Made by a program: the position numbers and the translations under genes
The notes under the pieces: model-generated
Database searches by the model: none
What the model was told of the DNA's origin: nothing
Seen by the model: only the letters and a program-made list of their open reading frames with translations
In this document: piece by piece, positions 18,321 through 57,736 of the stretch
How positions within the stretch are numbered: the stretch's first letter is position 1
Layout of the letters: every line of letters begins with the position of its first letter
Origin: Hemiscyllium ocellatum
Taxonomy: Eukaryota
NCBI RefSeq assembly: GCF_020745735.1
Contig: NC_083449.1
Span: 4,376,923 to 4,440,922, forward strand
Length of the DNA stretch: 64,000 nucleotides
Direction of reading: 5' to 3'

Positions 18321-18325
18321 TGATG

Positions 18326-24688: not shown

Positions 24689-25220
24689 CTACAAATCAAC
24701 AAGAGGCTAGTCTGGCAATATTGAACTGATCATTGTCACATTTATTGCATATTAAGTATGATGGTTTTTTTTATTAAACCAACAACTTTACCAGAACCAC
24801 GGATCTGATTCCATTGTTGCCCTAAGCTGCTCTCTGTCTGGGAATTGTTTGTTTTTCTTGTGATTCGATACCAGTTGATTTGGAGATGCTAGTGCATAAT
24901 GTTACACATCAAGTGCTTCAAAAAAACCTGTTGGACTATAACCTGGTGTTGGGATTTTTAACTTGATATCAGTTGAGTGAGATCCAGAAACTGAGCAACA
25001 ACTACCCAGCACCATGAATGGGAATACTCAACCACCAGCACGCTTACACAGTTCAATATCCAACTCCCTGTTCGAAAGAGGAAAAACGGCGCTAATTGTA
25101 ATGTTTTTACAAGACTATCATATGCCTTCAGTTGGTCCACCTAAATTCAAGAAAGAGCGGAAAACACATTGAAATTAAAACAGGGTTCGTTCAGAGGATT
25201 GGAAACCGCATGAATCTCCC

Positions 25221-25530
25221 TCAGTAGGCCCACACACAGCCCGAGAAAGGCCTCTCTCTTCCCCCCAGCCCGCTCACTCCAAGTTCCGGGACCAGTTCCT
25301 GCTCCGCTCGGCCTCTTACAAACAGCCCCCGGTTCTCCCTGAAGTCACCCCGAATCAATCCCGGTCTCGGAGCCCCCTCTGTGTCCCAGGCTCCCATCCC
25401 GATGTGCTGCTGGAAGGAGGCTGCTGTTCCCTCGCTTCCCTGGGCGCTGATCTCTCCATTGCGGTCTGTTTCAAACAAACCTCTTGCACTCACTGAGTAA
25501 ATGCTCCTCAATGGCAGCGCTGGGGGAGGG
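25221..25530 (-). other. Putative first exon (donor TCA|GTGAGT, GTGAGT at 25488-25493) and GC-rich intron start of a gene divergent to H4
   Basis: Consensus donor just downstream of the NRF1 motif; the block is conserved in four copies. Confidence 0.5.
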
Positions 25531-26077: not shown

Positions 26078-26108
26078 GGGTAAAGCGACCCTTTTCCAGC
26101 GAACCAAA

Positions 26109-26150
26109 GGCTCTTTTCAGAGCCACCCAAACCCTCCGAAAGTGAGCGGG
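26109..26150 (+). promoter_or_regulatory. Histone 3' stem-loop and U7 downstream element (H4)
   Basis: GGCTCTTTTCAGAGCC ACCCA followed by a purine-rich GAAAGTGAG. Confidence 0.95.
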
Positions 26151-26791
26151 GACCTGAGGTCGTGAGAGGCAGCGCATTGAGGGAACTGTTATTGTGGCAG
26201 GTTATTTCACGTTTATCGCGTCTTTTAAAATTATCTCAGTTTCGAAAATGTACCAGTACCGTGTTTTGCGGTACGGCAGAGAGCATTCGGAGTGGACTGT
26301 TCACTTTGTTGCTGTTTACGGTGGCAAATGATTTTACAATTGTATGTACACCTGTAGTGTGGATGAGGTTATTCGGCCAATTGAGGCTACTGTTGTGTAA
26401 GCTGATGTAAAGAATCCCATCTTTGTAATAGTGAGGTGTACGTGCATCAGGGGGTGGAGGGAAGAATGAACCGAGCAGAGAATGAAATGAAGAGGGAAAC
26501 GCTGCAGACAGTGGGAGGAATCAGCTTATTGATGTATTAACGGAAACGTGAAGCCAAACCCGATCGGGAACATCCGTGACACTATTCTAGACTCATTGAT
26601 CAAACATAAAGGTCACTCAGGCAGTGACCCTAATGAGGAATAAAGTATCCAGACACTCTTACAATTTTCCTCTGCTGCCACCGACAGTAACAATATCCAA
26701 TAACAAGAAGATTGAAATGTAGCAATGTTAGGTAAAACGGCAAGGGTTCTACACATTATAAGGAAAGTAATTCAACCCGACAGAGAATTCA

Positions 26792-27497
<706 letters not shown>

Positions 27498-28267
27498 CCA
27501 AACAAAGCAGTATGTTTTACCTGAAAAATGAAGTACAAAAAACTGAGCAAGTTGAAAAAATATTAAGACCCATGTTATTTACTTTTAGTTTACAAATGTG
27601 GACTGTTCTCACACGGTCTTACTCTCCCTCATTTGCCGATCTGTAACTGTCCATTTCTGATCTTGAGAGTGGGTTATTTTCTAAACCTTAAGAAGCAGAG
27701 AAACAACAGGTCAAACACCGCAGTCTGCAACCTGTCTTTCCTTTTCACATTTCAATCCCACCCCGATATGCTGATAAAACAGCACACAGCATTCTTCCGG
27801 CTCAGCATCGAGGGCGAACACGTTTATTTTTCAGGCGATATTTTAAAGCTGACCTCCCTTATCGATCTCGATCAAATTCAGCAAAAGCTCCACGTTTCTG
27901 TCCGGTAGCTGTGTTGGTGTTCTCTTGGTTCGCTTTGGAATTTCTCACCAACGGCATGAAGTGTTATTTTGCAGAGCGAGAAGTCGGCTCAAACCCGCGC
28001 ATTGGAAATGTAAAGTAAATCAGAAGGGAAAATGCATCAACGTGGGGGTGAAAGACGTGGGCATTTTTCTGTCAGGGGTAAACAAGATTAAAAATGACTC
28101 ACTGGCGCCTGATCTGCTCTCGTCCACCCCACTCCCGAATAATTTGCAAAAAAGCACTTATTAACTCAGAAACATATAACGCGATAAGTTAAATTGCTCT
28201 ATCAATAATCACGAACTAAAACAAACAACCGAAGGAATGGTTCAGCTATCTTAGGGACGTTGAGGAT

Positions 28268-28283
28268 GGCTCTTATAAGAGCC
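28268..28283 (-). promoter_or_regulatory. Histone 3' stem-loop (H2B copy 1), variant loop TATA
   Basis: GGCTCTTATAAGAGCC. Confidence 0.88.
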
Positions 28284-28324
28284 TTTGGGTTGTGAATGTG
28301 TGTGTTTCAGTGCAGTGCGGTCCT

Positions 28325-28705
28325 TCACTTGGAGCTGGTGTACTTGGTCACTGCCTTTGTGCCCTCCGACACGGCGTGCTTGGCCAGCTCCCCGGGCAAC
28401 AGCAGCCGCACAGCGGTCTGGATTTCCCGGGAGCTGATGGTGCTGCGCTTGTTGTAATGGGCCAGGCGGGAAGCCTCCCCCGCGATGCGCTCGAAAATAT
28501 CGTTGACGAACGAGTTCATGATGCTCATGGCCTTGGAGGAGATGCCGGTGTCGGGGTGAACCTGCTTCATCACTTTGTAGATGTAGATGGAGTAACTTTC
28601 TCTCCTGGACCTTTTCCTCTTCCTGCTGCCCTTTGCTGGCGCCTTCTTAATGATTTTCTTCGCGCCCTTCTTGGAGGTTTGCTGGGCTTTCTTCTCATCA
28701 GCCAT
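28325..28705 (-). CDS. H2B: Histone H2B
   Basis: [17 protein letters not shown]...[25 protein letters not shown]...AVTKYTSSK, 126 codons, intact. Confidence 0.98.
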
Positions 28706-28756
28706 CGTCCTACTCACTTTCAGAAACAGAATAAGGTACAGTGGGCTCGGAGCTCC

Positions 28757-28872
28757 CTCTTTATAGACTGACGGCGTAAGCAATGCTAATGAGGGATGGG
28801 GAAAGGCTTGCCTTAGATTGGGTAGTTTACCAAGAGGCATTCCCAAACACGGAGTCTCTCTGATTGGTTAGT
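28757..28872 (-). promoter_or_regulatory. H2B promoter (two CCAAT boxes, octamer ATTAGCAT, TATAAA)
   Basis: Motifs read directly on the minus strand upstream of the H2B ATG. Confidence 0.8.
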
Positions 28873-29690
28873 GAGATCCAATGTGTATCTGCAACGAAAC
28901 GTGAAGTGGATGGTGATTCTGTTCCTGTCAGTCTGACTGAGGGAGATTTGTTTTGTGTCTGCGACACAGAAAGTGACGGTGGTATTGGCTCGGTTTCCTT
29001 TTGCTTGTTGTGATGCTGATGTGTTTCTAGTTCCGCATGTCTGTTCTGTTCCTCTGTATAGGATGGAATTAACACAGAACTTTTCACTGTGTGAAAAAAA
29101 GCTCTCATCCATTCGAAATTGCGATTACATTTGCTGTCAAGCTTCACATACCACTGGAACCTGACTGAATGTTTTCTCCACTTGGGGTTCATCCAACTCA
29201 TTCTCAATTGCACGGAGTTGGAGAAATTATAAGAAAAAGTTTATATGGAGTACTTTTGTTGAGTCATATATTGATGAATATATTTCTGAGATCTTGACTG
29301 ATAACTATGGGCCCAGAAACGTATCGATAACTGGGTGCTTTGAAAGTACCTGCAGTGTACTGAACCACGTTGCTGCACTTTTCAATTAGGCGTCTTGCAG
29401 TTTCATGCAGGGATTTATAACTTTTCTCCGTCTTACGCGAATGCCTGTTAACCAGCAACTGTCAGCATGTTATACATATATGTGTCACTTTAACTTTATA
29501 TCTGTCATGTTCTAATTTACACATTTTGCATTAACTCAACATCTGTCCAATGAGGCTCTGGTCCTCCATCTAATAGTCAGTGTTATTTCAAGACCGATTT
29601 TATTCTGTAACCATCAAACACTGATGTGAGCGGTAAAACGTTACACTATTTGCCAGCCATTTAGAAATATTCCTCCAATCTGTGCCCCCA

Positions 29691-29837
29691 GGAGAAAGTG
29701 AGAACTGCAGATGCTGGGGATCAGAGGCTTATGCCCAAAACGTCGAGATGAAGGGCTTATGCTTAAAACAACGATTCTCCTGCTCCTCGGATGCTGCCTG
29801 ACATGCTGCGCTTTTCCAGGACTACACTCTCGACTCC
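29691..29837. mobile_element. Penelope-type terminal repeat with internal inversion and two decayed hammerhead motifs
   Basis: GAGAAAGTGAGAACTGCAGATGCTG followed by the opposite-orientation GGCTTATGCCCAAAACGTCGA-GATGAAGGGCTTATG; paralogs at about 42110 and 52323. Confidence 0.6.
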
Positions 29838-30539
29838 AATCTGTGCCCGTCTGTTTCTGAGATGTATTTTTGTAAACTCTACTTCACAATCTTAACATGT
29901 CAGTATGTTACTGGACTGTAACTCAAACCTTCCAAAGTGTACCTTGTTGCTTTACTCTGTCGGTGTGAAATTTGAAAGTACCAGGTACCACTTTGGACAG
30001 ACTCAGGTAGGACTCACTACCCTCCACTCCCATGCCCCATGAATATCAGCTTCTGCAAATTGAACTTGGGTTTGTATTTATAACTGCAGCATTTTGATAA
30101 AGGATAATGTACATTGTTACTGACAATATCTGCAACATCACTGCGGATGTTACATTGGCTAGAAACTGGCATAAACAATCAATAGTTGTATTATATCCTA
30201 ACGATTTATTGCTTTGCAACTGACTCAGTATTTCATTCTATAAATGCCAGTTTATTCTTTCTAATCTTGTATTTACTCAGTATCAGTCAATTACTGGCAT
30301 GACATAGAGCAAATATCTCAACATCTCAAAGTTTCTGATGAAATGGGTGGTTTTTTTTCCACTCCATCCTTGATATATCTGGGTAACTTATAACTGAATC
30401 GATCAGTGTGTGATCTGTGAGCACACACACATCAGTAAGTTAAAGATAAAGTGTATAGTGAATGATGCTGCAGATACAGTGTCTCTGCTGTAGTTATTAA
30501 TTTCTTTCAATCTTCTGTCACTTTAAATATCTCAAAGCA

Positions 30540-30952
30540 GAAGACCATAAGAAGCTTGAGAATTCTGTGACATTTCTATCTGCATGTGTGTACTCTGTCC
30601 TGAGAAGAGATCACAAAGACTTTAGTTATGGTCTTCATCTCATTTTGATGTTTAGTGCCCATAACCAAAGACTCCCTGATGTATCAAAAAAGATATATGG
30701 CTACATTAGCATAAAGTAAGCTGATAACTCAACCCTAACAGCTTTCTGTGGAACAGAATAAGGGGACAATGTTCTGCATTGCTTTCTTAGACAGAAGGCT
30801 TCCTGTTCAAAACTGTGTCCCTCACTCGGGATTCTCTCATGAGCAGTGACATAACCCCAGCATCAACTCTGTCAACTCCCTTCAGATCATTTTTATTTTG
30901 CTCTAAAGGTCATCCATTGTTCTTCAAAACTCCAATGAGAATATACCCAACC
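30540..30952 (-). mobile_element. Old CR1 3' end
   Basis: AGACCATAAGA tail and similarity to 43712-44130 (AAACTCCAATGA). Confidence 0.5.
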
Positions 30953-30974
30953 ATTTTATACGTATAATGAGAGC

Positions 30975-31990
30975 ATATCAATCTGCATCTCTAAGCTTCT
31001 GCTATTTGAATATGAGGGTACAGGGATCACACTTTCCCAGTAAGATTCTGCTATGTGCATACCTATGTGAATTTCTCACCCTAGACCTGTTGGTTTCTAC
31101 TGTGTGAAAACAACAGTTTCTACTCTCAAATGGGATAGTTTAATCAATCGTCCATGTCAGTTTCTGTATTGTTAAAATGTGAACGTAGTTATCAATGTCA
31201 ACCTGCCATCTTCTGTGAAGTGAACATGTGGGGGTCCATATTGAAATGTACCTGTTGCTTTCAGCGACAGGAATGCATGAGTTTAGTTATCATTATTTTC
31301 CTGTCAGTTTCTTCGATGTGAATGAATTGGTGTAGTTATCCACCTGTACTGATGAAGGGCTTTTAAACAAAACGTCGATTCTTCTGCTCCTTGGATGCTT
31401 TCTGGCCTGTACCTTTCCAGTACCACACTCCTGACTCTAATCTCCAGTATCTGCAGTCCTCAGCTTTGCCTATCCATTTGTACCTGTCAGTTTCTGATCT
31501 GTGAATATGGAAGTGTCGTTATTGATCTGTCCATCAGTTTCTTTAATTTGAATATGACTGTCTAGTCATCTATCTCTCCCTGTCAGTTTCTGTGATGTGA
31601 TGACAGTCCAATTATTTATCTGCCCTTGTCAGTTTCTGCTGTGTGAATATGAGAGTGGCATTATCAGTCTCTACCTGTCAGCTTTTGCTATGTCAATGTG
31701 ATTTTAGTTATCAATCTGCCTCATTAGGTTCTAGGTGAATGTAAAAATGTAGTTATCAATATATACCTGTAGATTCTGCTCTGGGAATGTGGGTGTGTTA
31801 TCAAAATGTACCGGTCAGTTTCTGCAACGTGAATGTTTGAGTGCAGATTTCAATCTGTATCAGACAGTTTCTGCAATCATCAGTCTATCCCTGACATATA
31901 GTTGAAGCTGAATGGATGAGTGCATCTGTACCGGAAAGTATCTGTACCTGTCAGTTTGTGTTCTGTGAATAAGTGAGTGTACTTACACAT
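30975..31990 (-). repeat. ~47-bp minisatellite array (reverse) with a pLTR-like insert at about 31350-31470
   Basis: CCTGTCAGTTTCTG repeats. Confidence 0.72.
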
Positions 31991-32094
31991 TTGTCTCTGT
32001 TAAACATGACACTTGCAGAAACAGCAGGAGCTCTATTTACTTCAAATCTCTATTGCTCAACATGAATAAGATTTTATCTATTGCCATCCATGTC

Positions 32095-32425
32095 AGGGTG
32101 GCATGGTGGCACAGTTGTGCCAGGGACGCAGATTCAATTCCAGCCTTGGTTCATTATCTGTGTGCAGTTTGCACCTTCTGCCAGTGTCTGCATAAGTTTC
32201 CTCTGCGTGCTCTAGTTTCTTTGCATGGTCCAAACATGTGCAGGTTTGCTGGAATAGCCATGGTAAATTGTCCTGTATTATTCAAGGATGTGCAGTGTCA
32301 GTGGGTTAACTGTGGTAAACGTGAAGTTATGGGGATAGGGTGGGGTCTACGTCTATGTGGGATCAGATTTGGAGAGTTGTTGCAGGGGACTGGGCCAAAT
32401 TACCTCTCTCTGCACTGGAGAAATT
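32095..32425 (+). mobile_element. Old diverged HE1/V-type SINE
   Basis: GGCATGGTGGCACAG..GATTCAATTCCAGCC..TGTGTGCAGTTTGCAC..GCCATGGTAAATTG. Confidence 0.7.
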
Positions 32426-33792
32426 CTATGTATTGTAAATGAAAGTGAGACTTTTGCTATCATTAATCAATCTCAACAGTGTAAAGCAGTTTGGATAATT
32501 TCCACAACTTTTATTCAATGGCACAGTTTTTGATTAAGTTATATTCGGCATCTGTATTTGAATTTATTGTTCACATGTTTATAAACAGACCACTTTATGA
32601 GAGCTTTCTCACTGTGTGTCCAATCACCTCTGGTATCTGTCTGAATGTGTACCTCTTCATGTCAATATTTGATTTCCCTTTGTACAGGTATGATGTTCTG
32701 GAAAGTGTAGGGGGGTGATGGCTGTTCATGCTACATTCCCCTGAGAATCCAAGTTTCTGGTACTGAGACTGGCTCGAATGCAACGAGGGGTACATCGGCT
32801 TCCAAGAGATCAATTGTGTGAGGGGATTCTGTCGTCCGAGGTACAGACAGACGTTTCTGTGGCCAGCAGCGATAAAGCAGAATGGTGTTGGTTCCGTGGT
32901 GCCAGGATCAAGGGTGTCTCAGAGAGGGTACAGAATGTTCTCACGGGTGAAGAGGGGACAGCAAGAGGTCATTGTCCACATTGGAACCAACAACATAGGA
33001 AGGGAAAAGGTTGTGATTCTGAAGGGAGATTACAGAGAGTTAGGCAGAAATTTAAAAAGGAATTTACAAGCTAGTGAGAGCAGGAATAGGAGGATAGAAC
33101 AGATGAATGCATGGCAGAGGAACTGGTGCATGGGGAAGGATTCATATTTTTGGATCATTGGAATCTCTTTTGGGGTAGAAGTGACTTTTATAAGGAGGAC
33201 GGATTGCACCTAAATTGGAAGGGGACTAATATACTGGCAGGAAATTTCTTCGATCTGCTCGGGACAATTTAAACTAGTAAGGTGGGCGGGGGGAAACGGG
33301 ACCACGGACGTAGTGAGGAAAGAGATCAGTCTGAGACTGGTACAGTTAAGAACAGAAGTGAGACAAACAATCAGGGCAAGCAGGGACAAGGTAGGACGAA
33401 TAAACTAAACTGCATTTACTTCAAGGCAAGGGAAGTAAATGCAGGGAAAGCAGATGAACTTAGGGCATAGTTAGGAACATAGGACTGGGATATCATAGCA
33501 ATTACAGAAACATGGCTCAGGGATGGGCAGGATTGGCAGCTTGATGTTACAGGATACAAATGCTACAGGAAGGACATAAAGGGATGCAAAAGAGGAGGGG
33601 GTGTGGCATTTTGAGAAGGGATAACATTACAGCTGTGCTCAGAGAGGATGTTCCTGGAAATACATCCAGGGAAGTTATTTGGGTGGAACTGAGAAATAAG
33701 AAAGGGATAATCACCTTATTGGGATTGTATTATAGACCTCCGAATAGTCAGAGGGAAATTGAGAATCAAACTTGTAAGGAGGTCTCAGCTAT

Positions 33793-35005
33793 AACCACGG
33801 TAGCGTGGCCGAGTGGTCTAAGGTGCTGGATTTAGGCTCCAGGCATTTTAATTTCAGTAAAGTGTTCGACAAGGTTCACCATGGGAGCTGATTAGCAAGG
33901 TTATATCTCATGGAATACATTTGAATACAGAACTGGCTCAAAAGTAGAAGACAGAAGGTGGTGGTGGAGGGTTGTTTTTCAGACTGAAGGCCTGTGACCA
34001 GTGGAATGCCACAAGGATCGGTGCTGGGCCCTCTACCTTTTGTCATTTACATAAATGATTTGGATGCGAGCATAAGAGGTACAGTTAGTAAGTTTGCAGA
34101 TGACACTAAAATTGGAGGTGTAGTGGACAGCGAAGAGGGTGACCTCAGATTACAATAGGATCTGGACCAGATGGGCCAATGGGCTGAGAAGTGGCAGATG
34201 GAGTTTAATTCAGATAAATGCGAGGTGCTGCATTTTGGGAAAGAAAATCTTAGCAGGACTTATATACTTAATGGTAAGGTCCTACGGAGTGTTGCTGAAC
34301 AAAGAAACCTTGGAGTGCAGGTTCATACCTCCTCAAAAGTAGAGTCGCAGGTAGATAGGATAGTGAAGAAGGCGTTTGGTATCTTTTCCTTTATTGGTCA
34401 GAGTATGGAGAACAGGAGTTAGGAGTCATGTTGCGCTGTACAGGACATTGGTTCGGCCACTGTTGGAATATTGCGTGCAATTCTGGTCTCCTTCCTATCG
34501 GAAAGATGTTGTGAAACTTGAAAGGGTTCAGAAAAGATTTACAAGGATGTTGCCAAGGTTGGAGGATCTGAGCGATAAGATAAGCTGAACAGTCTGGGGC
34601 TGTTTTCCCTGGAGCGTCGGAGGCTGAGGGGTGACCTTATAGAGGTTTACAAAATTATGAGGAGCATGGATAGGATAAATAAGCAAAGTCTTTTCCCTGG
34701 GGTCAGGGAGTCCAGAACTAGAAGGCATAGGTTTAGGGTGAGAGGGGAAAGATATAAAAGAGACCAAAGGGGCAACCTTTTCACATAGAGGGTGGTTCGT
34801 GTATGGAATGAGCTGCCAGAGGATGTGGTGGAGGCTGGTGCAATTGCAACATTTAAGAGGCATTTGGATGGTTATATGAATAGGAAGAGTTTGAATATGG
34901 GTCGGGTGCTGGCAGGTGGGACTAGATTGGGTTGGGATATCTGGTTGGAATGGACGGGTTGGACGGATGGGTCTGTTTCCATGCTGTACATCTCTATGAC
35001 TCTAT
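33793..35005 (+). mobile_element. Chimeric retrocopy: tRNA-Leu 5' half fused to a CR1 RT/3' end
   Basis: Inserted between host CR1 bases GCTAT and CTGTAAGAATAAT, which are contiguous in the CR1 copy at 8293-8310; ends in a TCTATGAC-type tail. Confidence 0.8.
33799..33848 (+). pseudogene. tRNA-Leu(UAG) 5' fragment (acceptor 5' strand, D arm, anticodon arm, part of variable arm)
   Basis: GGTAGCGTGGCCGAGTGGTCTAAGGTGCTGGATTTAGGCTCCAGGCATTT matches vertebrate tRNA-Leu-TAG; T arm and 3' acceptor are missing. Confidence 0.9.
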
Positions 35006-35902
35006 CTGTAAGAATAATAGGGTGGTTATGGTAGGGGATTTTAACTTTTCAAACATAGACTGGGACTGACATAGTGTTCAAGGTTTAGATGGAGAGCAAT
35101 TTGTTGAGTGCGTACACGACAATTTTCTGATTCACTATGTGGATGTATCTACCAGAGAAGATGCAAAACCTGACCTACTCTTGGGAAACAAGGCAGGGCA
35201 GGTGACTGAGGTGTCAGTGGGTGAGCACTTTGGGCCAGCGACCATAATTCTATTAGATTTAAAATAGTGATGGGAAAGGATAGACCAGATCCAAAAGTTG
35301 AAATTCTAAATTGGAGAAAGGGCAATTTTGACGGTATTAGGCTCCTACCAGTCCATGCCGACCAGATATCCCAACCCAATCTACTCCTGCTGCCAGCACC
35401 TGGCCTATGCTGTACATCTCTATGACTCTGAGACATAAGGGGCAGTTTTATTTTTAAACAAAGTGATGGTAGCAGTGGGACACACTGCCTGGGGTGGAGA
35501 TGGAGGAAGATACAACAAGGGTATTGAAAGGACTTTTAGGTAAGCAAATGAATATGTAAAGACTAGAGGATTATGGACCAAGCCAGGGAGAAGGGATTAA
35601 TTGCATTTTGGTGGCATGTTCGGCACAACATGGTGGGCCGAAGGACCCATTCCTGTCCGTACTGTTCGATGTTCATATTTTAATGCAGTGTATATTTTGG
35701 ATGAGAATGCATTCAAGTTGATTGAAACTGGGTAGGATGCATTTAGAATATAGATTAAAAAATATAAACTTCAGTTTCCTTGGTGGTGTTTGACTCTTGG
35801 TTTGAACATATCTCTCTGGGAATGGAGCTCAATGTGAACCTGACTCAATCCACTCTGTGACTGTGGAAAGGATTGTTCTTCACTCTGATAGCAGTAACAT
35901 AC

Positions 35903-36010
35903 CTGCTGTTTGTTCGAAGCAACTGGTCACACTTGGCTCTGTACCGAGGGAATATTACATTGTCTTGGTCCTTTGAGTACTTGCCTGGAGGAAGACAGAA
36001 GGGATACCTC
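35903..36010 (-). other. 108-nt exon-like module, distal type
   Basis: aatcaCAG acceptor and CAG|GTATGT donor. Confidence 0.55.
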
Positions 36011-36068
36011 CTGTGATTGGCAACATCAACGTAACATTCAGTTCCTCATCATTAAGGTTTTTTTTAAA

Positions 36069-36137
36069 TTAAAGCCAGCAATGTCAACCGAACCATGGGT
36101 CTGATTCCACTCCGGCCCTAAGCTGTTCCTTGTCCAT
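36069..36137 (-). pseudogene. Small-ORF module MDKEQLRAGVESDPWFG* (premature stop)
   Basis: The first 16 codons encode the same protein as 18893-18961 despite five third-position changes. Confidence 0.45.
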
Positions 36138-36385
36138 TTTTTATTAAAATAGTAAGCCCAAAGGAATGAGATCCAGAAATGAAACAACACCCGTACAGCT
36201 CCATAAATGGGACCTACCAGATGCAAGTGGGTATTTGGATATGTGAGTTTAGTTATTGATCTATGTCTGTCAGTTTCTGCTTGGAGAATGTGAGAGTGTA
36301 GTTATAAAACTGTAACATTCATTATATGGTCAATATATTTACATATTCACACTGCAAAGACTGGCAGGGTCCAATTGATAACTAT

Positions 36386-37372
36386 AGAATCATAAAAATA
36401 ATACAGCACAGAGGGGGCTACTTAGCCGTCTTATCCATGCCAACCCAAAAACACCCAAAGGCCCTTTCTCATCCCATCTTCTTGCCGCAGCCCGTAACCT
36501 TGCAGTTAACGGAACTGGGAGTGCAGTTCCAGAGATTTTTGTTTAAAAGAGTTTAGGGTCTCTGCCTCCAGCACCAAATCAGGCAGGAAATTCCAGATAC
36601 CCACCACTCTATGCATAAAAAAAATTCCTCACGTATCATGTAATCCTACACTACTTAGTTTGAATCAATAATCCCTTGTGTTTGAACTCTCTGCCAAAGG
36701 AAACAGGTTCGTCCTGCGTACTCTAATCTCTCCCTCTCACTATTTCGTGAAAAATCACACAACACAAGGTTATAGGTATATTTGGAAGCACAAGCTTTCA
36801 GAGTGCACACAATACTCCAGTTGTAGCCTCATCAGTGCCTTATATGGTTTCATTGTTATATCCCTACTTTTCAATTCCATCCCTCTGCCTATGAAGGAGA
36901 GCATTCCACGTGCCTCCTTCACAACTCCATCTACCCATAGTGACCCATACACTTGCACACTCACCCAGCCCCTCAGTATATTCCCATTTACTGTTTGACT
37001 TCCCAAAATGCATTCCCTCACACTTCTCAGAGCTGAACTCCATCTGCCATTTTCCTGCCCACTCCACCAAACCATCTATAATACTTTTGGAGATGACAGC
37101 TATCTTCTACACTATCCACTAAATAGCCAACTTTTGTGTCATCTGCAAATTTCACAAATCTGCCCATCACATTCAAGTCCAAATCCTTAATGTATAAAAC
37201 AAACAGCAGAGGTCCCAACACTGAGCTATACAGAGCACCACTTGAAACAGCTTTCCATTCACAAGAGCAGCCATCAACCATTACCATTTGTTTCCTGTTA
37301 CTCAGCCAACTTTGCATCCAATTCAACACATTACCCTGTATCCCACAGCTTTTACTTTTTGAACCAGTCAGC
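36386..37372 (-). mobile_element. Old CR1 RT/3' fragment
   Basis: SSVLGPLLFVLYIKDL, KFADDTKVG and WQMEFSSEKC. Confidence 0.82.
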
Positions 37373-39810
37373 TGTGATGCTGCTGCTCCTTTAACAAGCC
37401 TATAAAAGACACAGGCTCTGAAAAGTCTGACTTGATGGGTTTTAGGGACATTTTAATTATAGCTAATAGATAATACCTCAGGCAAAAGGCTTCCACATTT
37501 TTAAAAAGAACACTTGTACAATGAAAGGGGAGTGGTCCAGTTTTCCCAGCTCAGCTTTTCTCTGGTTTGATTTGGTCTTTAGCTGTCTGGCCATTGACTG
37601 AAAGCAGTCAGGCAGGTCAAAAAGTTGCTGAACCCAAAGAAGCCAGTCCATGCTGGCACTCTCTCTCTCTGACATCTCTCCTGTAAGACCCTGTGTTTGA
37701 TTTTATCTTTTTTGTGCCAAGGGGTGTTTGTGGGGAGTATTGCAAGTATTGGGAACAGCATCATTAAGTTGGTATAATCTGTAGGGTTTTTGGACAGGTT
37801 AAGTTATTTAGTATTCTGTCCTCTTTTAAGACATAGGAACATTTGTTTGTGTTTCATTTGATAATCTTGTAAATCAGTTCTGTTTTGTTTAAAACAACGG
37901 GGTTTGACCAGCTACATCACTCCTGGAACATCCATGTTACACCTGCTTAAAACAACTAGCAAAGTTCGGGTCCGGGCTACTTGAAATGTTATGAGGGGGT
38001 CTGGCCTGGTCCATATCAGTTAGGGGGCTCTTTGAAGGATTTATTCTGTTGTTATGATTTGGGATTAGGGTTGTTGGACTTGAAGGCAGCGAATGGTAGG
38101 TGTTAGTGTCTTTTGTTCCAGGTTTTGAATTCAGTTGGTTTAAACTGTGCTTCGGAGAGCAACAGCTCTTTCACTCAACCAGAGTTTTCTGCAGGTGGAA
38201 GAAGTGATTTTAGGCCTTTTACAAAAGGTGATTAAGGGTAAGCTGCTGGAAATAGCAAACAATCTGGGATTGAGGCTGTGTCCTTCCATGAGGAAAGGAG
38301 AGAAAATTACAGCAGTAGCTCAGCATTCACGCTTGTTGAAAACACCATCAGAATCTTCAGAGATGGCTAACATTCAATGAAAAATGCTGCAACTTGAGTT
38401 AGAGGCACAAAACAAGGAGAGGGCAACAGAAATGAATTTTTTTTTGAACTATGATTAAATGCAGAAGAGAGAACGAGAGAGAGAGAGAAAAGGAGAGAAA
38501 GGAAAGGAAGAAGGAGAGGGAGTTTGAACATTGGAAATTGGCATTTAGACAGGAATTCAAAAATTCACTTCCTGAAGTAGTGAAAACTCATGTGAAAGAG
38601 CAGAGAGTTAAAACGGCAAGACTAGCAGCTGAAACGGCTGATGATTATGAGTTGATCAAAGTTTGACTTCTAAAACCAATTTCAATCCATGAGAGATAGA
38701 AGTTGAGGATAAGAGAAATCCTCACATGGAAAGGAAATGATAGATCTCAGTGAAGGTCGTAAGGATGACTTATCACAAGTTAAAAAGGAAATCCTTGAAG
38801 GGGAAAGGGAAGTTAAAAAGCTCTGGTGTTTTCCCTGCAATAAAGTAGGCCACATGAAATCATGTTGGTGGGTTAGGAAAAACACTGGGAAGCCAGATGT
38901 AGGAAACAGGAGAAGCCAATGAATTTTGTTAGAGTGGTAACAGAAAGCACAACAGAGATTCGAAAGCTGCACCAGAATGTACGAGCTGGACGGAGGTGCC
39001 AGATCTTCTTAAACCATCCATCTCTGAAGGTAACGTTTTAATCGCATGGCTAGGAGGATCAGGTAAAGTGGTTACAATATTAAGAGATACAAAGATCCTC
39101 TCAATCTGTGATGCTGAAAGATGAGGTGATACATACCTCTGAAGGACTATTGCTCGAAAATGTACTAGTAACGGGAATTCATGTTGTGAGAAGTGAGGTT
39201 ATAGTGTCCAGTGCAGTGACGAGTGGAGAAGTTGTGGTAGGGGTAGTGGACAAACTCTCAGCTCCGGGAATACAATTTGTCCTTGCTAATGATATTGTTG
39301 ATTCACTGGTAGGAGTGCTGCTGTTGAAAAGCCAGTGAAATCTCAGGCAACTGAATTAGTGCTGGACATATAACCTGGGCATTTTCCAGACTGTGTGGTG
39401 ACAAAGTCATCAGTTGAAACAGGAGAGATCAAAGAGTACAGATAAGAAAGTTGAAGTGAAATTAGCAGAGACCCTGGTTGATCAGATGGTTGAGACAAAC
39501 CGGGAAAAGATAGATGACAAAGCAGACATCTTTAGCTGAGATAAATTAACCAAGTTACAGCAGAAAGATGAAAATTTAAAGGAATTGTACCAAAAGGCCA
39601 ACACAGAAAAATAATATGAATATATCCCTGCATAATATTATATTAATAATAATGTATTAATGAGGAAATGGAGACCATCACACATTCAGGCTGATGAGAA
39701 ATGGACAGAACTGTATGAAGTTGTATTGCCAGTGGGTTATGGAAAGGAGGTGTTGTGAGTAGCACATGAGCTACCACTAGGTCATCATTTAGGAGCGAGA
39801 AAAACTCAGA
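37373..39810 (+). mobile_element. Decayed Gmr1-like Ty3/Gypsy element (LTR 37373-38018, PBS, gag with SCAN-like and CCHC motifs, protease remnant)
   Basis: TG...CA LTR followed by GGGGGCTC; FKNSLPEVVKTHVKEQRVKTARLAAETADDY; CFPCNKVGHMKSC; VTILRDT. Confidence 0.78.
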
Positions 39811-40383
39811 CTTTTGCAGAGACTGTTTGGAAATCACATTACTTAATTGTCGTCTCTGTCTGTGATGACTATTCAGTAAAAGATTAATGCTACCCTTCTC
39901 AATTACAGATAAACTCCATGTAAATGTGCTTCACTTGGGTTGGAGGATTTGAGTTAGCAGTAGAGGCTGAATAGGCTGGAGCTGTTTTCCCTGGAGAGGG
40001 ACCTTTATAGAGGTTCATAAAATCATGAGCAGCATGGATAAGTGGTAGAGGCTGCACCGAAGGGTCTCTTTCCGTGCTGTACATCTCTATGATTCGATGG
40101 CTGTAAATAATAACACTTGTTGGAAATGGGGTGATGTGCACTGAGAATGGAGAGAGAGAGAAACTGCTGATGAGCACAGTTTCCCTCCATCTCTGTACTT
40201 AGCAGCTACCTCACAGATGGTTGTTGAAACTATGTAACAGTATGATCTATTTGTTTATTTACATTGTAGAAAATGTTCTTATTAAAAGCAGATTTTAATG
40301 CTGACCCTGAGTGTCTATTTTGGATGAGGATTCAGTTTATCTATCTTTAAAACTGAATCTTCAAATGTCAACGGGCTACATAC

Positions 40384-40490
40384 CTGCTGTTTGCTCGAGG
40401 CAGTTGGTCCGACTTCCCTTTGAACCGAGGAAGTATTACAGTGTCTTAGTCCCTCAGGTATTTGTCTGGGGGAAGATAGATAGACACCAC
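40384..40490 (-). other. 107-nt exon-like module, proximal type
   Basis: ttgattaaTAG acceptor and CAG|GTATGT donor. Confidence 0.55.
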
Positions 40491-40632
40491 CTATTAATCA
40501 ACGTGAAGCGAGACTGGTAATATTGATCAATGCTGAAAATATGTTGCTGGAAAAGCGCAGCAGGTCAGGCAGCACGCAAGGAACAGGAGATTCGACGTTT
40601 GGGGCATAAGCCCTTCTTTAGGAATGTCATAT

Positions 40633-40728
40633 TCATCGCATATTCGTTAGGATAAGCCAGCAACTTAAACAGAACCACGGATCGGATTCCATTGTTGCGC
40701 TGAGCTGCTCTTTGTCTGGAGATTGCAT
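40633..40728 (-). CDS. Candidate 31-aa small ORF MQSPDKEQLSATMESDPWFCLSCWLILTNMR
   Basis: ATG-to-TGA open frame homologous to the 18893-18961 module. Confidence 0.3.
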   Translation of the reverse strand: MQSPDKEQLSATMESDPWFCLSCWLILTNMR

Positions 40729-41029
40729 TTATTTCTCATATGATTCGATACCAATTGAGTGAGATGGAGAAACTGAGCAACTGCACAGCTCCATGAGTAG
40801 GACTACTCACCACCAGAATGCTAACACAGTTCAAAATCCAACTCCCAATACACTACCTGTTGGAGAGAGAAAAAACGGTGATATACCTTATTTTTTCCCA
40901 AGACACACTCCTTTTACAGGAGTATCCCATTCCTACAGTCGGTCTGCGATTCCGATATTGACTGCACAATCTCAACAAACAATCGGAAACAATGAAATCT
41001 CAACAGAGTTCAGAGGATTGTAAACTCCA

Positions 41030-41508
41030 GGAATGTCCCACAGCAGCTTCTTCCCGCTCTGCCTCCCTCAGCAGGCCCACACACAGCCCGAGAAAGGCCT
41101 CTCTCTTCCCCCCAGCCCGCTCACTCCAAGTTCCGGGACCAGTTCCTGCTCCGCTCGGCCTCTTACAAACAGCCCCCGGTTCTCCCTGAACTCACCCCGA
41201 ATCAATCCCGGTCTCCGAGCCCCCTCTGTGTCCCAGGCTCCCATCCCGATGTGCTGCTGGAAGGAGCCTGCTGTTCCCTCGCTTCCCTGGGCGCTAGTCT
41301 CTCCATTGCGGTCTGTTTCAAACAAACCTCTTGCACTCACTGAGTAAATGCACCTCAATGGCAGCGCTGGGGGAGGGTCTCACGCATGCGCTCCTCTACT
41401 CAGGAATAGTCAGCTTTGGGGAGAAAAAGGTTCCGTCCCAAATACAGCTGGGGCTGGAGGCAGAGCTGGATGATCAAGACATTGATCGGTCTGCCACTTA
41501 GTTTCCTC
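41030..41508 (-). other. Divergent-gene promoter, first exon (GTGAGT at 41335-41340) and GC-rich block; no adjacent H4
   Basis: Homologous to 25221-25645; NRF1 motif retained. Confidence 0.6.
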
Positions 41509-41514
41509 TGAACG

Positions 41515-43320
41515 CTGAATTAACACAGAACTTATCAATGTATGAAAAAAAACTCATCCATTTGAAATTGTGATTACATTTGTCAACAAGTTACACAATC
41601 TGCTGGAACCTGACCGTGATTGTTTTCTACGCTTGGGGTTGAGGCAACTCATTCTCAATTGCCCAGGGTTAAAGAGAAATGGAAAGAAAAAGTTTCTGTG
41701 CCATACTTTTCTTGAGTCAAGAGTTGAGTCACATCTCGAGTGTGGAATTAATATATTTCTGAGAACTTGATTGATAACCATGGGCCCAGAGACCTATCAA
41801 TAACTGTTTCGGCATCGTGCAGCTCCATGTAGGGATTTATAGCATTTCTCAGTGTTATGCGAACGCCTGTTAACCAGCAACTGTTAGCATGCAATATATG
41901 TGTCAATTTAACTCTGCACCTGTCGCGTCCTCATTTACACATTTTGGATTAACTCAACATCTGTCCATTCAGACTCTGCTCCTCCGTGTAATAGTCATTT
42001 AGTGTTATTTCAAGAGAGGTTTTATTCTGTACCATCAAGCACTGATGTAAGCTGTAATATGTTACACTATTTGCCAGCTACTTAGTAACATTCCTGCAAT
42101 CTGTGCCCCAAGGAGAGGTGAGTTCTGCAGATGCTGAGGATCAGAGGGCTTATGCCTGAAACGTTGAGATGAAGGGTTTATGATTCTCCTGTTCGTTGGA
42201 TGTTGCTGGACCTGCTGTGCTTTTCCATCACCACATTCTCTAACACCAATCTGCGCCGTCTGTTTCTGGGATGTAAAGCATTTTTATAAATCCGTTTTCA
42301 GTCTTTACATGTCAGTATGTTACTGGACTGTAACTCAAACCTTTATAAGTGTAACTTGTTTTACTCTGTAAGGTGTCATCCATTGACATAAGAATGTGTT
42401 TCATGTATACCTACAACTTTGAATGTACTGGATTCTACTTTGGACAGACTCAGGTAGGATTCGCTGCCCTCCACTCCCACACCCTACGAATATTAGCTTC
42501 TGCACACAGACAGTCACCCAAGGCTGGAATCGAACCTGGGACCCTGTTGCCGTAAGGCAGCAGTGCTAACCACTGTGCCACCCCACTAGCAGAGGTGGGA
42601 TCTCTAGTGAGAATATGCCCAACCATTCTACAGTTACAACAAGAGTCTATGTATCAATCTGCAACTCACACATTCTGCCACGTGAATATGTGAGCACAGT
42701 TGTCGCTCTCTCCCTGTCAGTTTCTGTGATGTGCATACTTGAGTGAAGTTATCTGCCTGTACCTGTTCCACTCACTGAATATACGAGTAGAGGTATTACT
42801 CTCTCTCTCTCTCTATAGGATTCTCGTACATGCATACTTGAGAGAAGTTATCACCCCATACCTGTTGGTTTCTGCTATGTGACGATGACAGTCTTTGCTC
42901 TGTGAATGTGATTGTTTAATTATCAATTTCAGCATTGTTAAAATTTGAACATTGTTATCAATATCTCGGGTTGGGGTCTACATCTGGGCGAGATCCGCTT
43001 TGGAGAGTTGTTGCAGGGGGAGGTCCAAATGACCTCTACCTGCACTGGAGAAATTCTATGTAAAAGAAAATGAGAGATTTTATACCATTGTCAGTGTCTG
43101 ACAGTGTAGAGTAGTTTTGGACCATTTCCACAACTTCTATTCTATGGTAGGGTTTATGATTGTAAATTATATTCTGAATATGTATTTTGAACATGTGAAT
43201 TATTGTTCACATGTTTATAACAAGACCATTTTATGAGAGCTTCTTCATTCTGTGTCCAATAATCTCTGGGTATCTGTCTGAATGTGTAACTTTTCATGTC
43301 AATATTTCGTTTCCCTTTGG
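41515..43320 (+). repeat. Older partial paralog of the spacer upstream of H2B (29063-32680) with internal deletions
   Basis: Colinear blocks GAATTAACACAGAACTT, CCTGTTAACCAGCAACTG, TTTGGACAGACTCAGGTAGG and TTATGAGAGCTT. Confidence 0.8.
42505..42584 (-). mobile_element. HE1-type SINE head fragment
   Basis: GGCTGGAATCGAACCTGGG..GCAGCAGTGCTAACCACTGTGCCACC. Confidence 0.8.
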
Positions 43321-43598: not shown

Positions 43599-43633
<35 letters not shown>

Positions 43634-43711
43634 GGGGGGTAGCGGGGGTTCAGTATTTCTGAATAAACAAGTGGAGTTTACTTTGTGACCAATGTGACGC
43701 CATGCACTTAA

Positions 43712-49087: not shown

Positions 49088-49446
49088 AATGAACCGAGCA
49101 GAGAATGAATAGAAGAGGGAAACGCTGCAGAGACAGTGGGAGGATTCAGCTCTTAATGTTGCTTCAAAGGAAACGTGAAGCCAAACCTGATCGGGAACAT
49201 CCGTGACACTGTTCTAGACTCATTGATCAAACATAAAGATCTTCCAGACAGTGACAGTGCAATGAGGAATAATGTAGTTCCAGACACACTTGCAATTTTC
49301 CTCTGCTGCCACCGACAGTAACAATAGCCAATAAAAAGGAGATAGAAATGTAGCAATGTTAGGTATAACGGTCAGGGTTCTACACATTAAAAGGAAAGTA
49401 ATTCAACTCGACAGAGAGTTCAGTTCCCTTCACAGATGCTGTGAGT

Positions 49447-49462
49447 GGCTCTGAAAAGAGCC
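49447..49462 (-). promoter_or_regulatory. Histone 3' stem-loop (H2A copy 2)
   Basis: GGCTCTTTTCAGAGCC followed by ACTCA on the minus strand. Confidence 0.95.
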
Positions 49463-49492
49463 TTTGGGTTGTCAGATTCAAGATTAGTCTCT

Positions 49493-49882
49493 TCACTTTT
49501 TAGCAGATCCAGCAGCGGAAGTTTTCTTGGGCAGCAGCACGGCCTGGATATTAGGCAGCACCCCGCCCTGAGCGATGGTCACCCCTCCCAGCAGCTTGTT
49601 GAGCTCCTCGTCGTTGCGCACGGCCAGCTGCAGGTGCCTGGGGATGATGCGGGTCTTCTTGTTGTCCCGGGCCGCGTTGCCGGCCAGCTCCAGGATTTCA
49701 GCCGTCAGATACTCCAGCACCGCAGCCAGATAGACCGGCGCTCCGGCACCCACACGCTCAGCATAGTTGCCCTTTCTCAGGAGCCTGTGAACACGGCCCA
49801 CCGGGAACTGCAGGCCAGCCCGGGACGACCGAGACTTCGCCTTGGCGCGACCTTTCCCACTACCTTTTCCTCTACCAGACAT
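49493..49882 (-). CDS. H2A: Histone H2A, intact
   Basis: [40 protein letters not shown]...[15 protein letters not shown], 129 aa. Confidence 0.98.
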
Positions 49883-55310: not shown

Positions 55311-57736
55311 CAGGTATGATGTTTTGGAAAGTGTAGGGGGGTGATGGCTGTTCATGCTACATTCCCCTGAGAATCCAAGTTTCTGGTACTGAGACTGGCT
55401 CGAATGCAACGATGGGTACATCGGCTTCCAAGAGATCAATTGTGGATTCTGCAGTCCGAGGTACAGACAGACGTTTCTGTGGCCAGCAGCGATAAAGCAG
55501 AATGGTGTGTAGTTTCCCTGGTGACAGGATCAAGGATGTCTCAGAGAGGGTGCAGAATGTTCTAATGGAGGAAGAGGGGACACAAGAGGTCATTGTCCAC
55601 ATTGGAACCAACAACATAGGAAGGGAAAAGGTTGTGATTCTGAAGGGAGATTACAGAGAGTTAGGCAGAAATTTAAAAAGGAATTTACAAGCTAGTGAGA
55701 GCAGGAATAGGAGGATAGAACAGATGAATGCATGGCAGAGGAACTGGTGCTTGGGGAAGGATTCATATTTTTGGATCATTGGAATCTCTTTTGGGGTAGA
55801 AGTGACCTTTACAAGAAGGACGGATTGCACCTAAATTGGAAGGGGACTAATATACTGGCAGGGAAATTTCTTCGATCTGCTCAGGACAATTTAAACTAGT
55901 AAGATAGGGCGGGGGAGGGGGGGGGGGGGGGGGGGGGAACCACGGACATAGTGAGGAAAGAGATCAGTCTGAGACTGGTACAGTTAAGAACAGAAGTGAG
56001 ACAAACTATCAGGGCAAGCAGGGACAAGGTAGGACGAATAAACTAAACTGCATTTACTTCAAGGCAAGGGAAGTAAATGCAGGGAAAGCAGATGAACTTA
56101 GGGCATAGTTAGGAACATAGGACTGGGATATCATAGCAATTACAGAAACATGGCTCAGGGATGGGCAGGATTGGCAGCTTGATGTTACAGGATACAAATG
56201 CTACAGGAAGGACATAAAGGGAGGCAAGAGAGGAGGGGGTGTGGCATTTTGAGAAGGGATAACATTACAGCTGTGCTCAGAGAGGATATTCCTCGAAATA
56301 CATCCAGGGAAGTTATTTGGGTGGAACTGAGAAATAAGAAAGGGATAATCACCTTATTGGGATTGTATTATAGACCTCCGAATAGTCAGAGGGAAATTGA
56401 GGATCAAACTTGTAAGGAGATCTCAGCTATAACCACGGTAGCGTGGCCGAGTGGTCTAAGGTGCTGGATTTAGGCTCCAGGCATTTTAATTTCAGTAAAG
56501 CGTTCGACAAGGTTCACCATGGGAGGCTGATTAGCAAGGTTATATCTCATGGAATACATTTGAATACAGAACTGGCTCAAACATAGAAGACAGAGGGTGG
56601 TGGTGGAGGGTTGTTTTTCAGACTGAAGGCCTGTGACCAGTGGAATGCCACAAGGATCGGTGCTGGGCCCTCTACCTTTTGTCATTTACATAAATGATTT
56701 GGATGCGAGCATAAGAGGTACAGTTAGTAAGTTTGCAGATGACACTAAAATTGGAGGTGTAGTGGACAGCGAAGAGGATTACCTCAGATTACAATAGGAT
56801 CTGGACCAGATGGGCCAATGGGCTGAGAAGTGGCAGATGGAGTTTAATTCAGATAAATGGGAGGTGCTGCATTTTGGGAAAGAAAATCTTAGCAGGACTT
56901 ATACACTTAATGGTAAGGTCCTACGGAGTGTTGCTGAACAAAGAGACCTTGGAGTGCAGGTTCATAGCTCCTCGAAAGTAGAGTTGCAGGTAGATAGGAT
57001 AGTGAAGAAGGTGTTTAGTATGTTTTCCGTTATTGGTCAGAGTATTGAGAACAGGAGTTAGGAGTCATGTTGCGCTGGACAGGACATTGGTTCGGCCACT
57101 ATTGGAATATTGCGTGCAATTCTGGTCTCCTTCCTATCGGAAAGATGTTGTGAAACTTGAAAGGGTTCAGAAAAGATTTACAAGGATGTTGCCAAGGTTG
57201 GAGGATCTGAGCTATAAGATAGGCTGAACAGGCTGGGTTGGGATATCTGGTTGGAATGGACGGGTTGGACGGAAGGGTTTGTTTCCATGCTGTATATCTC
57301 TATGACTCTATCTGTAAGAATAATAGGGTGGTTATGGTAGGGGATTTTAACTTTTCAAACATAGACCGGGACTGACATAGTGTTCAGGGTTTAGATGGAG
57401 AGCAATTTGTTGAGTGCGTACACAACAATTTTCTGATTCATTATGTGGATGTACCTACTAGAGAAGTTGCAAAACCTGACCTACTCTTGAGAAACAAGGC
57501 AGGACAGGTGACTGAGGTGTCAGTGGGTGAGCACTTTGGGCCAGCGACCATAATTCTATTAGATTTAAAATAGTGATGGAAAAGGGGAGACCAGATCTAA
57601 AAGTTGAAATTCTAAATTGGAGAAAGGGCAATTTTGATGGTATTAGGCTCCTAACAGTCCATGCCGAACAGATATCCCAACCCAATCTACTCCTGCTGCC
57701 AGCACCTGGCCTATGCTGTACATCTCTATGACTCTG
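55311..57736 (+). mobile_element. CR1 LINE with nested tRNA-CR1 chimera at 56431-57311 (duplicate)
   Basis: Paralog of 32685-35430. Confidence 0.88.
56437..56486 (+). pseudogene. tRNA-Leu(UAG) 5' fragment
   Basis: Identical to 33799-33848. Confidence 0.9.

What the first reader, a model, noticed from the sequence alone, without database searches (positions are those of the whole stretch)
33793..35005. tRNA-Leu(UAG) 5' half fused to a CR1 3' end: a proto-SINE-like chimeric retrocopy
Seen: an insert splits a host CR1 exactly at GCTAT|CTGTAAGAAT. It starts with 6 nt (AACCAC, possibly a pre-tRNA leader), then 50 nt of tRNA-Leu-TAG cut in the variable arm. This joins about 1.15 kb of CR1 RT/3' UTR ending in the TCTATGAC-type tail, whose last CTAT matches the target. 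The A box is intact. The CR1 'AFDK' codons supply GTTCGA at position 66, versus about 62 for the B-box core in the native tRNA. Established: LINE RT template switching makes small-RNA/LINE chimeras, and many SINEs are tRNA heads on LINE tails. Inference: a snapshot of SINE birth, possibly with a reconstituted but imperfect Pol III promoter.
Basis: partly seen in the sequence, partly recalled or inferred. Interest (0 to 1): 0.7.

Follow-up and report, generated by a model that had tools for sequence, protein, structure and literature searches.

The report
tRNA-Leu fragment fused to CR1 retrocopy
A shark jumping gene (a CR1-like LINE) was pasted once into an older copy of its own family with the front part of a leucine tRNA stuck to its broken front end; this is a clean fossil of a known copying accident, later duplicated with the surrounding histone-cluster DNA, and not a working new SINE.

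Summary
At 33793-35005 a 1,213-base block splits an older CR1-like LINE. A paralogous uninterrupted LINE copy is continuous at exactly that point (8297|8298).

The block has four parts:
- 6 nt of leader
- 44 nt that form the 5' strand, D arm and anticodon arm of a tRNA with anticodon TAG
- 10 ambiguous nt
- about 1.15 kb of LINE, from the RT motif FSKAFDKV to a native 3' end with an 8-nt repeat

The second copy (56431-57311) lies inside a colinear duplication of at least 15 kb at 95-97% identity. Both copies therefore record one event.

The best reading is one target-primed reverse transcription in which the RT switched from LINE RNA to a (pre-)tRNA-Leu.

The "proto-SINE with a rebuilt Pol III promoter" reading is not supported:
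- A T4 run sits between the A box and the B-box look-alike.
- Seven more T4/T5 runs follow.
- The look-alike lacks the B-box CC.
- No copy with different flanks is seen.

The genome-wide junction search could not be run.

This scan has noted the same chimera 85.7 kb beyond the window (unchecked), and other small-RNA/CR1 chimeras elsewhere in this genome. It is a new member of a known kind, of modest interest.

The parts
32749..33792 (+). Host CR1-like LINE, left part (up to the middle of the endonuclease domain); ends ...GCTAT
   Evidence: Matches the paralogous copy at 7232-8297. It is contiguous with the right part in that paralogue.
33793..33798 (+). 6-nt stretch ahead of tRNA position 1: a possible pre-tRNA 5' leader, or filler
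   Evidence: Read. It is absent from the empty site. Its origin was not testable here.
33799..33842 (+). tRNA-Leu(TAG) fragment, 44 nt: acceptor 5' strand, D arm and anticodon arm. Anticodon at 33833-33835; A box at 33806-33816.
   Evidence: Partial match to Rfam RF00005 with all stem pairs standard. Identical in the twin copy. ARAGORN finds no whole gene.
33843..33852 (+). Ambiguous junction of 10 nt (tRNA variable arm, diverged LINE codons or filler); contains the T4 run at 33846-33849
   Evidence: The paralogue reads VDVIYMDF here and the insert reads ..FNF, so the exact switch point cannot be fixed.
33853..35005 (+). 5'-truncated CR1-like LINE: RT from motif FSKAFDKV to the end of ORF2, then the 3' UTR. 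Decayed, with many stops.
   Evidence: 85.7% identical to 9606-10747. RVT_1 hit at 3e-7 for 33994-34155. Translations.
34992..35005 (+). Native LINE 3' terminus: 1.75 copies of an 8-nt unit. Its last CTAT repeats the host CTAT at 33789-33792.
   Evidence: Alignment of family 3' ends. The unit differs at 1 of 8 positions from the amniote CR1 microsatellite AUUCURUG quoted in PMC5729268.
35006..35340 (+). Host LINE, right part (rest of the endonuclease region); starts CTGTAAG
   Evidence: Matches the paralogue at 8298-8584.
35341..35429 (.). End of the host LINE: an inverted 66-nt piece of the LINE 3' region (35343-35408), then a direct 23-nt LINE 3' end (35407-35429). The host lacks its whole RT region.
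56431..57311 (+). Twin copy of the whole chimera (leader 56431-36, tRNA part 56437-80, LINE part), with a 329-nt deletion matching 34599-34927
   Evidence: The flanks are 98.2% and 96.6% identical to those of copy 1.
26465..41686 (+). Segmental duplication, unit A, of the histone-cluster repeat that carries the chimera. The partner unit is 49088-64000.
   Evidence: Colinear megablast blocks at 94.8-97.0% identity. Histone 3' stem-loops at matching positions.

Best explanation
This is a single retrotransposition accident, now an inert fossil.

1. A CR1-like LINE RNA began target-primed reverse transcription at a nick inside an older, already rearranged copy of its own family. Its terminal ...CUAU may have paired with the target's CTAT.
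2. After copying about 1.15 kb, and while inside the RT-coding region, the enzyme left the LINE RNA. It continued on a tRNA-Leu(TAG) molecule, entering at or just past the 3' side of the anticodon stem and running to the 5' end.
3. That molecule was probably a nuclear precursor, because 6 extra nt precede position 1 and positions 26 and 37 were read through cleanly.
4. The composite cDNA was joined to the other side of the break.
5. Later the histone-cluster repeat unit that carries it was duplicated, and one copy lost 329 bp.

Shown: the anatomy, the single target site, the native LINE 3' end, and the duplication. Inferred: the switch itself, the precursor nature of the tRNA, and any role of microhomology at the switch point.
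For: - **Empty site.** A paralogue shows the tRNA piece and the LINE piece arrived together between two adjacent host bases.
- **Orientation.** The tRNA piece is in the same orientation as a 5'-truncated LINE and at its 5' end, as expected if the RT moved from one RNA to the next.
- **LINE 3' end.** It is complete and ends in the family's 8-nt repeat, so reverse transcription started there.
- **Fragment boundaries.** The tRNA fragment starts within 6 nt of a mature 5' end and has a perfect A box. Its only departures from the vertebrate tRNA-Leu(TAG) I recall from memory are two CpG-to-TpG sites.
- **One event.** The two copies lie in one colinear duplication at 95-97% identity.
- **Literature.** tRNA-half/L1 chimeras are described at 21 loci (PMC11838501). 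Template switching by CR1 RT onto a tRNA was proposed for PittSINE (PMC5729268). Template switching is seen in many LINE clades (PMC4476161).
- **Leads only.** Unchecked notes of this scan list several other small-RNA/CR1 chimeras in this genome.
Against: - No unambiguous target-site duplication: only 4 nt (CTAT), which may be priming microhomology.
- The switch point cannot be placed within 33843-33852.
- End-to-end template jumping would give a whole tRNA. A fragment needs either a cleaved acceptor or an internal, microhomology-guided entry, and neither is shown.
- The 6-nt 'leader' could be filler.
- Other genomic loci could not be examined.
Confidence: 0.72

Rival explanations
1. The chimera is a copy of a pre-existing chimeric master: a tRNA-headed, CR1-tailed non-autonomous element, or a tRNA gene disrupted by a LINE. 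It would be transcribed from the tRNA start and mobilised in trans by CR1 proteins. This is the proto-SINE reading.
For: - It begins a few nt before tRNA position 1, as a Pol III transcript would.
- The A box is intact.
- It keeps the complete LINE 3' tail needed for recognition by a stringent RT.
- An unchecked scan note reports a third copy of 1,210 nt, 85.7 kb beyond the window.
Against: - A T4 run at tRNA positions 48-51, plus seven further T4/T5 runs on the sense strand, would stop Pol III.
- The B-box look-alike lacks the conserved CC.
- At 1.2 kb it is far longer than SINEs.
- Both copies in the window share flanks within one duplication.
- The third copy lies on the same piece as the window. 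Other notes of the scan place histone-cluster repeats millions of bases along that piece.
Confidence: 0.08
2. DNA-level capture. The 5' end of an ordinary truncated LINE cDNA was joined to the chromosome by end-joining, and a stray DNA or cDNA fragment of a tRNA gene was picked up as filler.
For: 5' junctions of LINE insertions often carry extra nucleotides. The 10-nt ambiguous junction and the 6-nt stretch could both be filler.
Against: The fragment starts almost exactly at a tRNA 5' end and is in the sense orientation. That fits an RNA template read to its end better than a random DNA piece. No flanking tRNA-gene sequence beyond 6 nt is present.
Confidence: 0.08
3. Two independent insertions at the same spot: a 3'-truncated tRNA retropseudogene and a 5'-truncated LINE, in either order.
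For: 3'-truncated 'tailless' tRNA retropseudogenes exist (cited in PMC4476161).
Against: It needs two hits at one phosphodiester bond. There are no separate target-site duplications. The empty-site paralogue lacks both parts, and both duplicated copies carry both parts.
Confidence: 0.07
4. The tRNA likeness is chance, and the 50 nt are just unknown 5' filler.
For: The Rfam score (17.3 bits) is below the family's gathering score of 29, and ARAGORN finds nothing.
Against: - Both stems pair perfectly, with a 7-nt loop and T before the anticodon.
- The A box matches at 11 of 11.
- A further 9 nt of acceptor strand fit the vertebrate tRNA-Leu(TAG) as I recall it.
- A low score is expected for half a tRNA.
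Confidence: 0.03

Closest known systems
U6/L1-type template-switch chimeric retrocopies, including the tRNA-half/LINE-1 chimeras of mammals (PMC11838501; Buzdin 2002/2003 as cited in PMC7245038)
   Same: A small Pol III RNA copy sits at the 5' end of a 5'-truncated LINE. The two were inserted as one unit at one target site. The tRNA is present only as about half a molecule.
   Different: - The LINE here is CR1-like, with a stringent, microsatellite-ended tail, not L1 with poly(A).
- There is no long TSD.
- The tRNA is in sense orientation, whereas most tRNA/L1 chimeras are antisense and are ascribed to twin priming.
- The fragment ends after the anticodon stem (position 43-49), not in the anticodon loop.
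CR1-mobilised tRNA-headed SINEs: TguSINE1/PittSINE of passerines (PMC5729268) and the shark V-SINE HE1 with its partner LINE HER1 (table in PMC3747384)
   Same: A tRNA-derived head is joined to a CR1-type tail ending in an 8-nt repeat. For PittSINE the authors proposed the same founding event, a switch of CR1 RT onto a tRNA.
   Different: - Those are short, multi-copy families with A and B boxes.
- This is a 1.2-kb single event with half a tRNA, no true B box, internal T-run terminators and no sign of amplification.
U6/CR1-like chimera in turkey (PMC4476161)
   Same: A small RNA is fused to a CR1-like element, taken as a sign that template switching is not limited to L1.
   Different: That case could not be fully characterised because of an assembly gap. 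Here both junctions and the empty site are readable.

Membership tests
LINE-mediated template-switch chimeric retrocopy | A small-RNA copy directly joined, in sense, to the 5' end of a 5'-truncated LINE that keeps its native 3' end | tested here: met
LINE-mediated template-switch chimeric retrocopy | Both parts inserted as one unit at one target site | tested here: met
   The uninterrupted paralogue is contiguous at 8297|8298, matching host 33792|35006.
LINE-mediated template-switch chimeric retrocopy | A target-site duplication or other insertion hallmark flanks the whole unit | tested here: inconclusive
   Only CTAT (4 nt) is repeated. It could be a short TSD or pairing of the LINE's terminal repeat with the target.
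LINE-mediated template-switch chimeric retrocopy | The small-RNA part is derived from a transcript, so its 5' end equals the transcript start | not testable with these tools
   This needs a shark tRNA-Leu(TAG) gene and its leader. None is in the window, and the letters could not be searched.
tRNA-derived SINE (CR1-mobilised) | Internal Pol III promoter: A box and B box | tested here: not met
   The A box matches at 11 of 11 (33806-33816). The B-box look-alike matches only GTTCGA (33864-33869) and lacks the CC.
tRNA-derived SINE (CR1-mobilised) | No Pol III terminator (T4 or longer) before the LINE-derived tail | tested here: not met
   Sense-strand T runs start at 33846 (T4), 33975 (T5), 34038, 34233, 34384, 34603, 34691 and 34778.
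tRNA-derived SINE (CR1-mobilised) | Many dispersed copies with unrelated flanks | tested here: not met
   The window holds two copies, both in one duplication with the same flanks. The genome-wide test could not be run.
tRNA-derived SINE (CR1-mobilised) | 3' tail shared with a partner LINE | tested here: met
   The tail is the LINE's own.
CR1-clade LINE | APE-type endonuclease plus reverse transcriptase | tested here: met
   Exo_endo_phos at 5e-8 for 7800-8138 of the paralogue, and RVT_1 at 3e-7 and 9e-8.
CR1-clade LINE | 3' end formed by an 8-nt microsatellite (amniote consensus AUUCURUG), with no poly(A) | tested here: met
   The end at 34992-35005 holds 1.75 units. The unit differs at 1 of 8 positions from the consensus quoted in PMC5729268.
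CR1-clade LINE | Hairpin just upstream of the microsatellite (RT binding site) | tested here: inconclusive
   The fold of 34916-35005 is no better than shuffles (z = 0.46).
CR1-clade LINE | RT groups with CR1 rather than L2 or Rex1 in a phylogeny | not tested
   No reference RT sequences were on hand. 'CR1-like' rests on the tail.
tRNA gene (functional tRNA-Leu) | Complete cloverleaf with T arm and acceptor 3' strand | tested here: not met
   ARAGORN finds none. Rfam matches model positions 10-42 only.

The most novel reading that the evidence does not exclude
The chimera, or a close relative of it, was itself mobilised at least once by CR1 proteins through its intact tail, for example from a Pol II read-through transcript. 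More broadly, the CR1 RT of this shark may switch onto nuclear Pol III precursors unusually often. The set of tRNA, 5S and 18S/CR1 chimeras noted by the scan would then give a countable record of the first step of SINE genesis in a stringent-type LINE.
Probability: 0.1. Interest if true: 0.55.

Novelty: new member of a known kind. Interest (0 to 1): 0.3.

Why it matters
Template switching by LINE reverse transcriptases is the accepted route by which SINE heads and tails come together. Almost all well-resolved examples are L1 chimeras in mammals.

For CR1-type ("stringent") LINEs the step has mostly been inferred from finished SINE families. Here both junctions, the empty site and the native LINE end are all readable in one locus, which makes this a tidy documented case in a cartilaginous fish.

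By itself it adds an example, not a principle. It has no sign of function or spread. Its value would come from a genome-wide count of such chimeras and of the small RNAs and break points they use.

Tried and rejected
- **Reads.** Read laying on 33500-35300 with four runs was meant to look for junction-bearing contigs with other flanks. Scripts worked beside those places.
- **Sequencing runs.** Runs under four coded organism labels hold 38-68% of the sampled words. Without laying them this says only that near-identical LINE-bearing DNA exists there, and nothing about independent loci.
- **tRNA gene calls.** ARAGORN and Rfam at gathering threshold find no tRNA. Only the permissive scan shows the half-tRNA.
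- **RT-binding hairpin.** Folding the 3' end gave nothing better than shuffles.
- **One complex event.** I considered a single event making both host and insert, because the host lacks its own RT region while the insert supplies RT. I rejected it. The RT would have to return to exactly the next base (8297 after 8298), whereas a nested insertion explains this simply.
- **SINE head.** I considered that the tRNA-like part is the head of a SINE. I rejected it. No SINE body follows, and the fragment is nearly undiverged from a tRNA.
- **Clade.** Placement by protein search or tree was not attempted. It was judged not worth the shared compute, since the verdict does not depend on it.

Full report
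**What is there**

Reading 33500-35300 shows a LINE endonuclease-domain reading frame (...QREIENQTCKEVSAI) that breaks after 33792 and resumes at 35006 (CKNNRVVMVGDFNF). Between these points lie 1,213 bases.

A second LINE copy of the same family elsewhere in the window (about 7169-10747) is roughly 85% identical to the host. It matches the host's left flank up to its base 8297 and the right flank from base 8298, with nothing in between. This paralogous "empty site" fixes both boundaries to the base. It also shows that neither a tRNA gene nor the LINE 3' half was resident there.

**Anatomy of the block**

| Coordinates | Part |
|---|---|
| 33793-33798 | six extra bases |
| 33799-33842 | 44-nt tRNA fragment |
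| 33843-33852 | ambiguous junction, contains a T4 run |
| 33853-35005 | 5'-truncated LINE, about 1.15 kb |

- **tRNA fragment.** The permissive Rfam scan aligns 33808-33842 to tRNA model positions 10-42, and every D-stem and anticodon-stem pair is standard. The score is 17.3 bits, with E = 0.38 over 4,227 families, which is about 1e-4 if only the tRNA family is asked. The 7-nt loop carries TAG at 33833-33835. Positions 33806-33816 fit the A-box consensus at 11 of 11. ARAGORN and Rfam at gathering threshold call nothing, as expected for a tRNA that lacks its variable arm, T arm and 3' strand.
- **LINE part.** From 33847 the sequence reads FNFSKVFDKV. The twin copy reads FSKAFDKV, and the paralogue reads VDVIYMDFGQAF at the same place. 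This is the RT motif region. Further on, an ORF piece hits Pfam RVT_1 at 3e-7. The whole stretch is 85.7% identical to 9606-10747.
- **3' end.** The block ends in the family's native 3' terminus, 1.75 units of an 8-nt repeat. The unit differs at one position from the CR1 microsatellite AUUCURUG quoted by Suh et al. (PMC5729268).
- **Junction.** The ten bases 33843-33852 cannot be assigned.
- **Target.** The last four bases (CTAT) repeat the four host bases before the block. This is either a 4-bp duplication or pairing of the LINE RNA end with the nicked target.

**How many events**

The junction and the tRNA fragment each occur twice in the window. The second copy is at 56431-57311.

Histone 3' stem-loops sit at matching positions. 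The host-LINE flanks of the two copies are 98.2% and 96.6% identical.

So the two copies are one insertion, copied later with a histone-cluster repeat unit. Copy 2 has since lost 329 bp (34599-34927).

An unchecked note of this scan reports the same kind of chimera, 1,210 letters long, 85,692 letters beyond the window's end on the same piece. Other notes place histone-cluster repeats millions of bases along that piece and name the animal as the epaulette shark. I could not read that copy's flanks.

**Mechanism**

The simplest account is one target-primed reverse transcription.

1. Synthesis began at the LINE's true 3' end and ran about 1.15 kb.
2. It then passed from the LINE RNA to a tRNA-Leu(TAG) molecule and continued to its 5' end.
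3. The product was joined to the other side of the break.

Three features fit an RNA template read to its end:
- the sense orientation
- the position of the tRNA piece at the 5' end of a truncated LINE
- the start of the tRNA piece within six bases of a mature 5' end

The six extra bases, together with clean read-through of positions 26 and 37, suggest an unprocessed nuclear precursor. In mature tRNAs those positions usually carry reverse-transcription-blocking methylations; this rests on my own knowledge and is inference.

Why only the first 44-50 nt were copied is open. One possibility is a cleaved acceptor. Another is entry at an internal site helped by a few bases of likeness between the LINE codons and the variable arm.

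The literature supports the kind of event:
- tRNA-half/L1 chimeras at 21 loci in mammals, mostly antisense (PMC11838501)
- a switch of CR1 RT onto a tRNA proposed as the origin of PittSINE (PMC5729268)
- template switching in several LINE clades, with the one U6/CR1-like case unresolved because of a gap (PMC4476161)
- chimera formation in SINE birth (PMC7245038)

**Why it is not a proto-SINE**

Seven more T4/T5 runs follow on the sense strand. In vertebrates four or more T's end Pol III transcripts (established knowledge), so the LINE tail would not be transcribed.
- The look-alike also lacks the conserved CC of the B box.
- The unit is 1.2 kb, and no copy with different flanks is seen.
- The LINE part is riddled with stops.

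**Limits**

From then on I sent none of those letters to any search tool. The genome-wide junction search, the check for a leader upstream of a genomic tRNA-Leu(TAG) gene and any reads-based test remain undone.

The run search shows near-identical DNA in runs under four coded organism labels but cannot speak to independent loci.

"CR1-like" rests on domain content and the terminal 8-nt repeat. No phylogeny was made, and the upstream hairpin was not supported.

**Verdict**

The SINE-birth and Pol III promoter reading is not.

This is a well-resolved, non-functional example of a known copying accident in a CR1-type LINE. It was duplicated passively with its surroundings. The scan has noted the same and similar chimeras elsewhere in this genome.

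Noticed in passing
window 35341-35429 (twin at about 57647-57735): The host LINE is itself rearranged. After paralogue position 8584 it jumps to an inverted 66-nt piece of the LINE 3' region (35343-35408), then to a direct 23-nt native 3' end (35407-35429). It therefore lacks its whole RT region. This looks like a snap-back or template jump early in reverse transcription, followed by a long internal skip.
   Followed up: partly
window 34599-34927 versus 57237|57238: Copy 2 of the chimera has a clean 329-bp deletion. The breakpoints lie in short TGGG-type repeats.
   Followed up: partly
window 26104-26149 (+), 26791-26836 (-), 49422-49467 (-): Three histone 3' UTR stem-loops score above the Rfam gathering score. 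The window is part of a histone gene cluster whose unit (at least 15 kb, 95-97% identical) is repeated at an offset of 22.3-22.6 kb.
   Followed up: partly
window 25216-25515, 41063-41362, 63370-63669: A 300-nt block is present three times at 97-98% identity, which is better conserved than the surrounding duplicated DNA. An earlier scan note reads it as the start of a repeated non-coding gene beside histone H4.
   Followed up: no
window 5682-5934, 6067-6329, 12309-12460, 18329-18607 (-), 42500-42582 (-): A repeat of about 260 nt occurs several times (76-93% identity), once directly abutting the 3' end of a truncated LINE copy at 17882-18322. It may be a SINE. It was not characterised.
   Followed up: no
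window 8957-9002 and 43601-43642 (-): A run of proline codons (13 P in the translated ORF) lies inside the paralogous LINE. It is matched by a similar simple run elsewhere and is probably a simple-repeat expansion.
   Followed up: no
window 33700-35100: Public runs under four coded organism labels hold 38-68% of the sampled 31-mers of this stretch. No run holds more than 68%.
   Followed up: no
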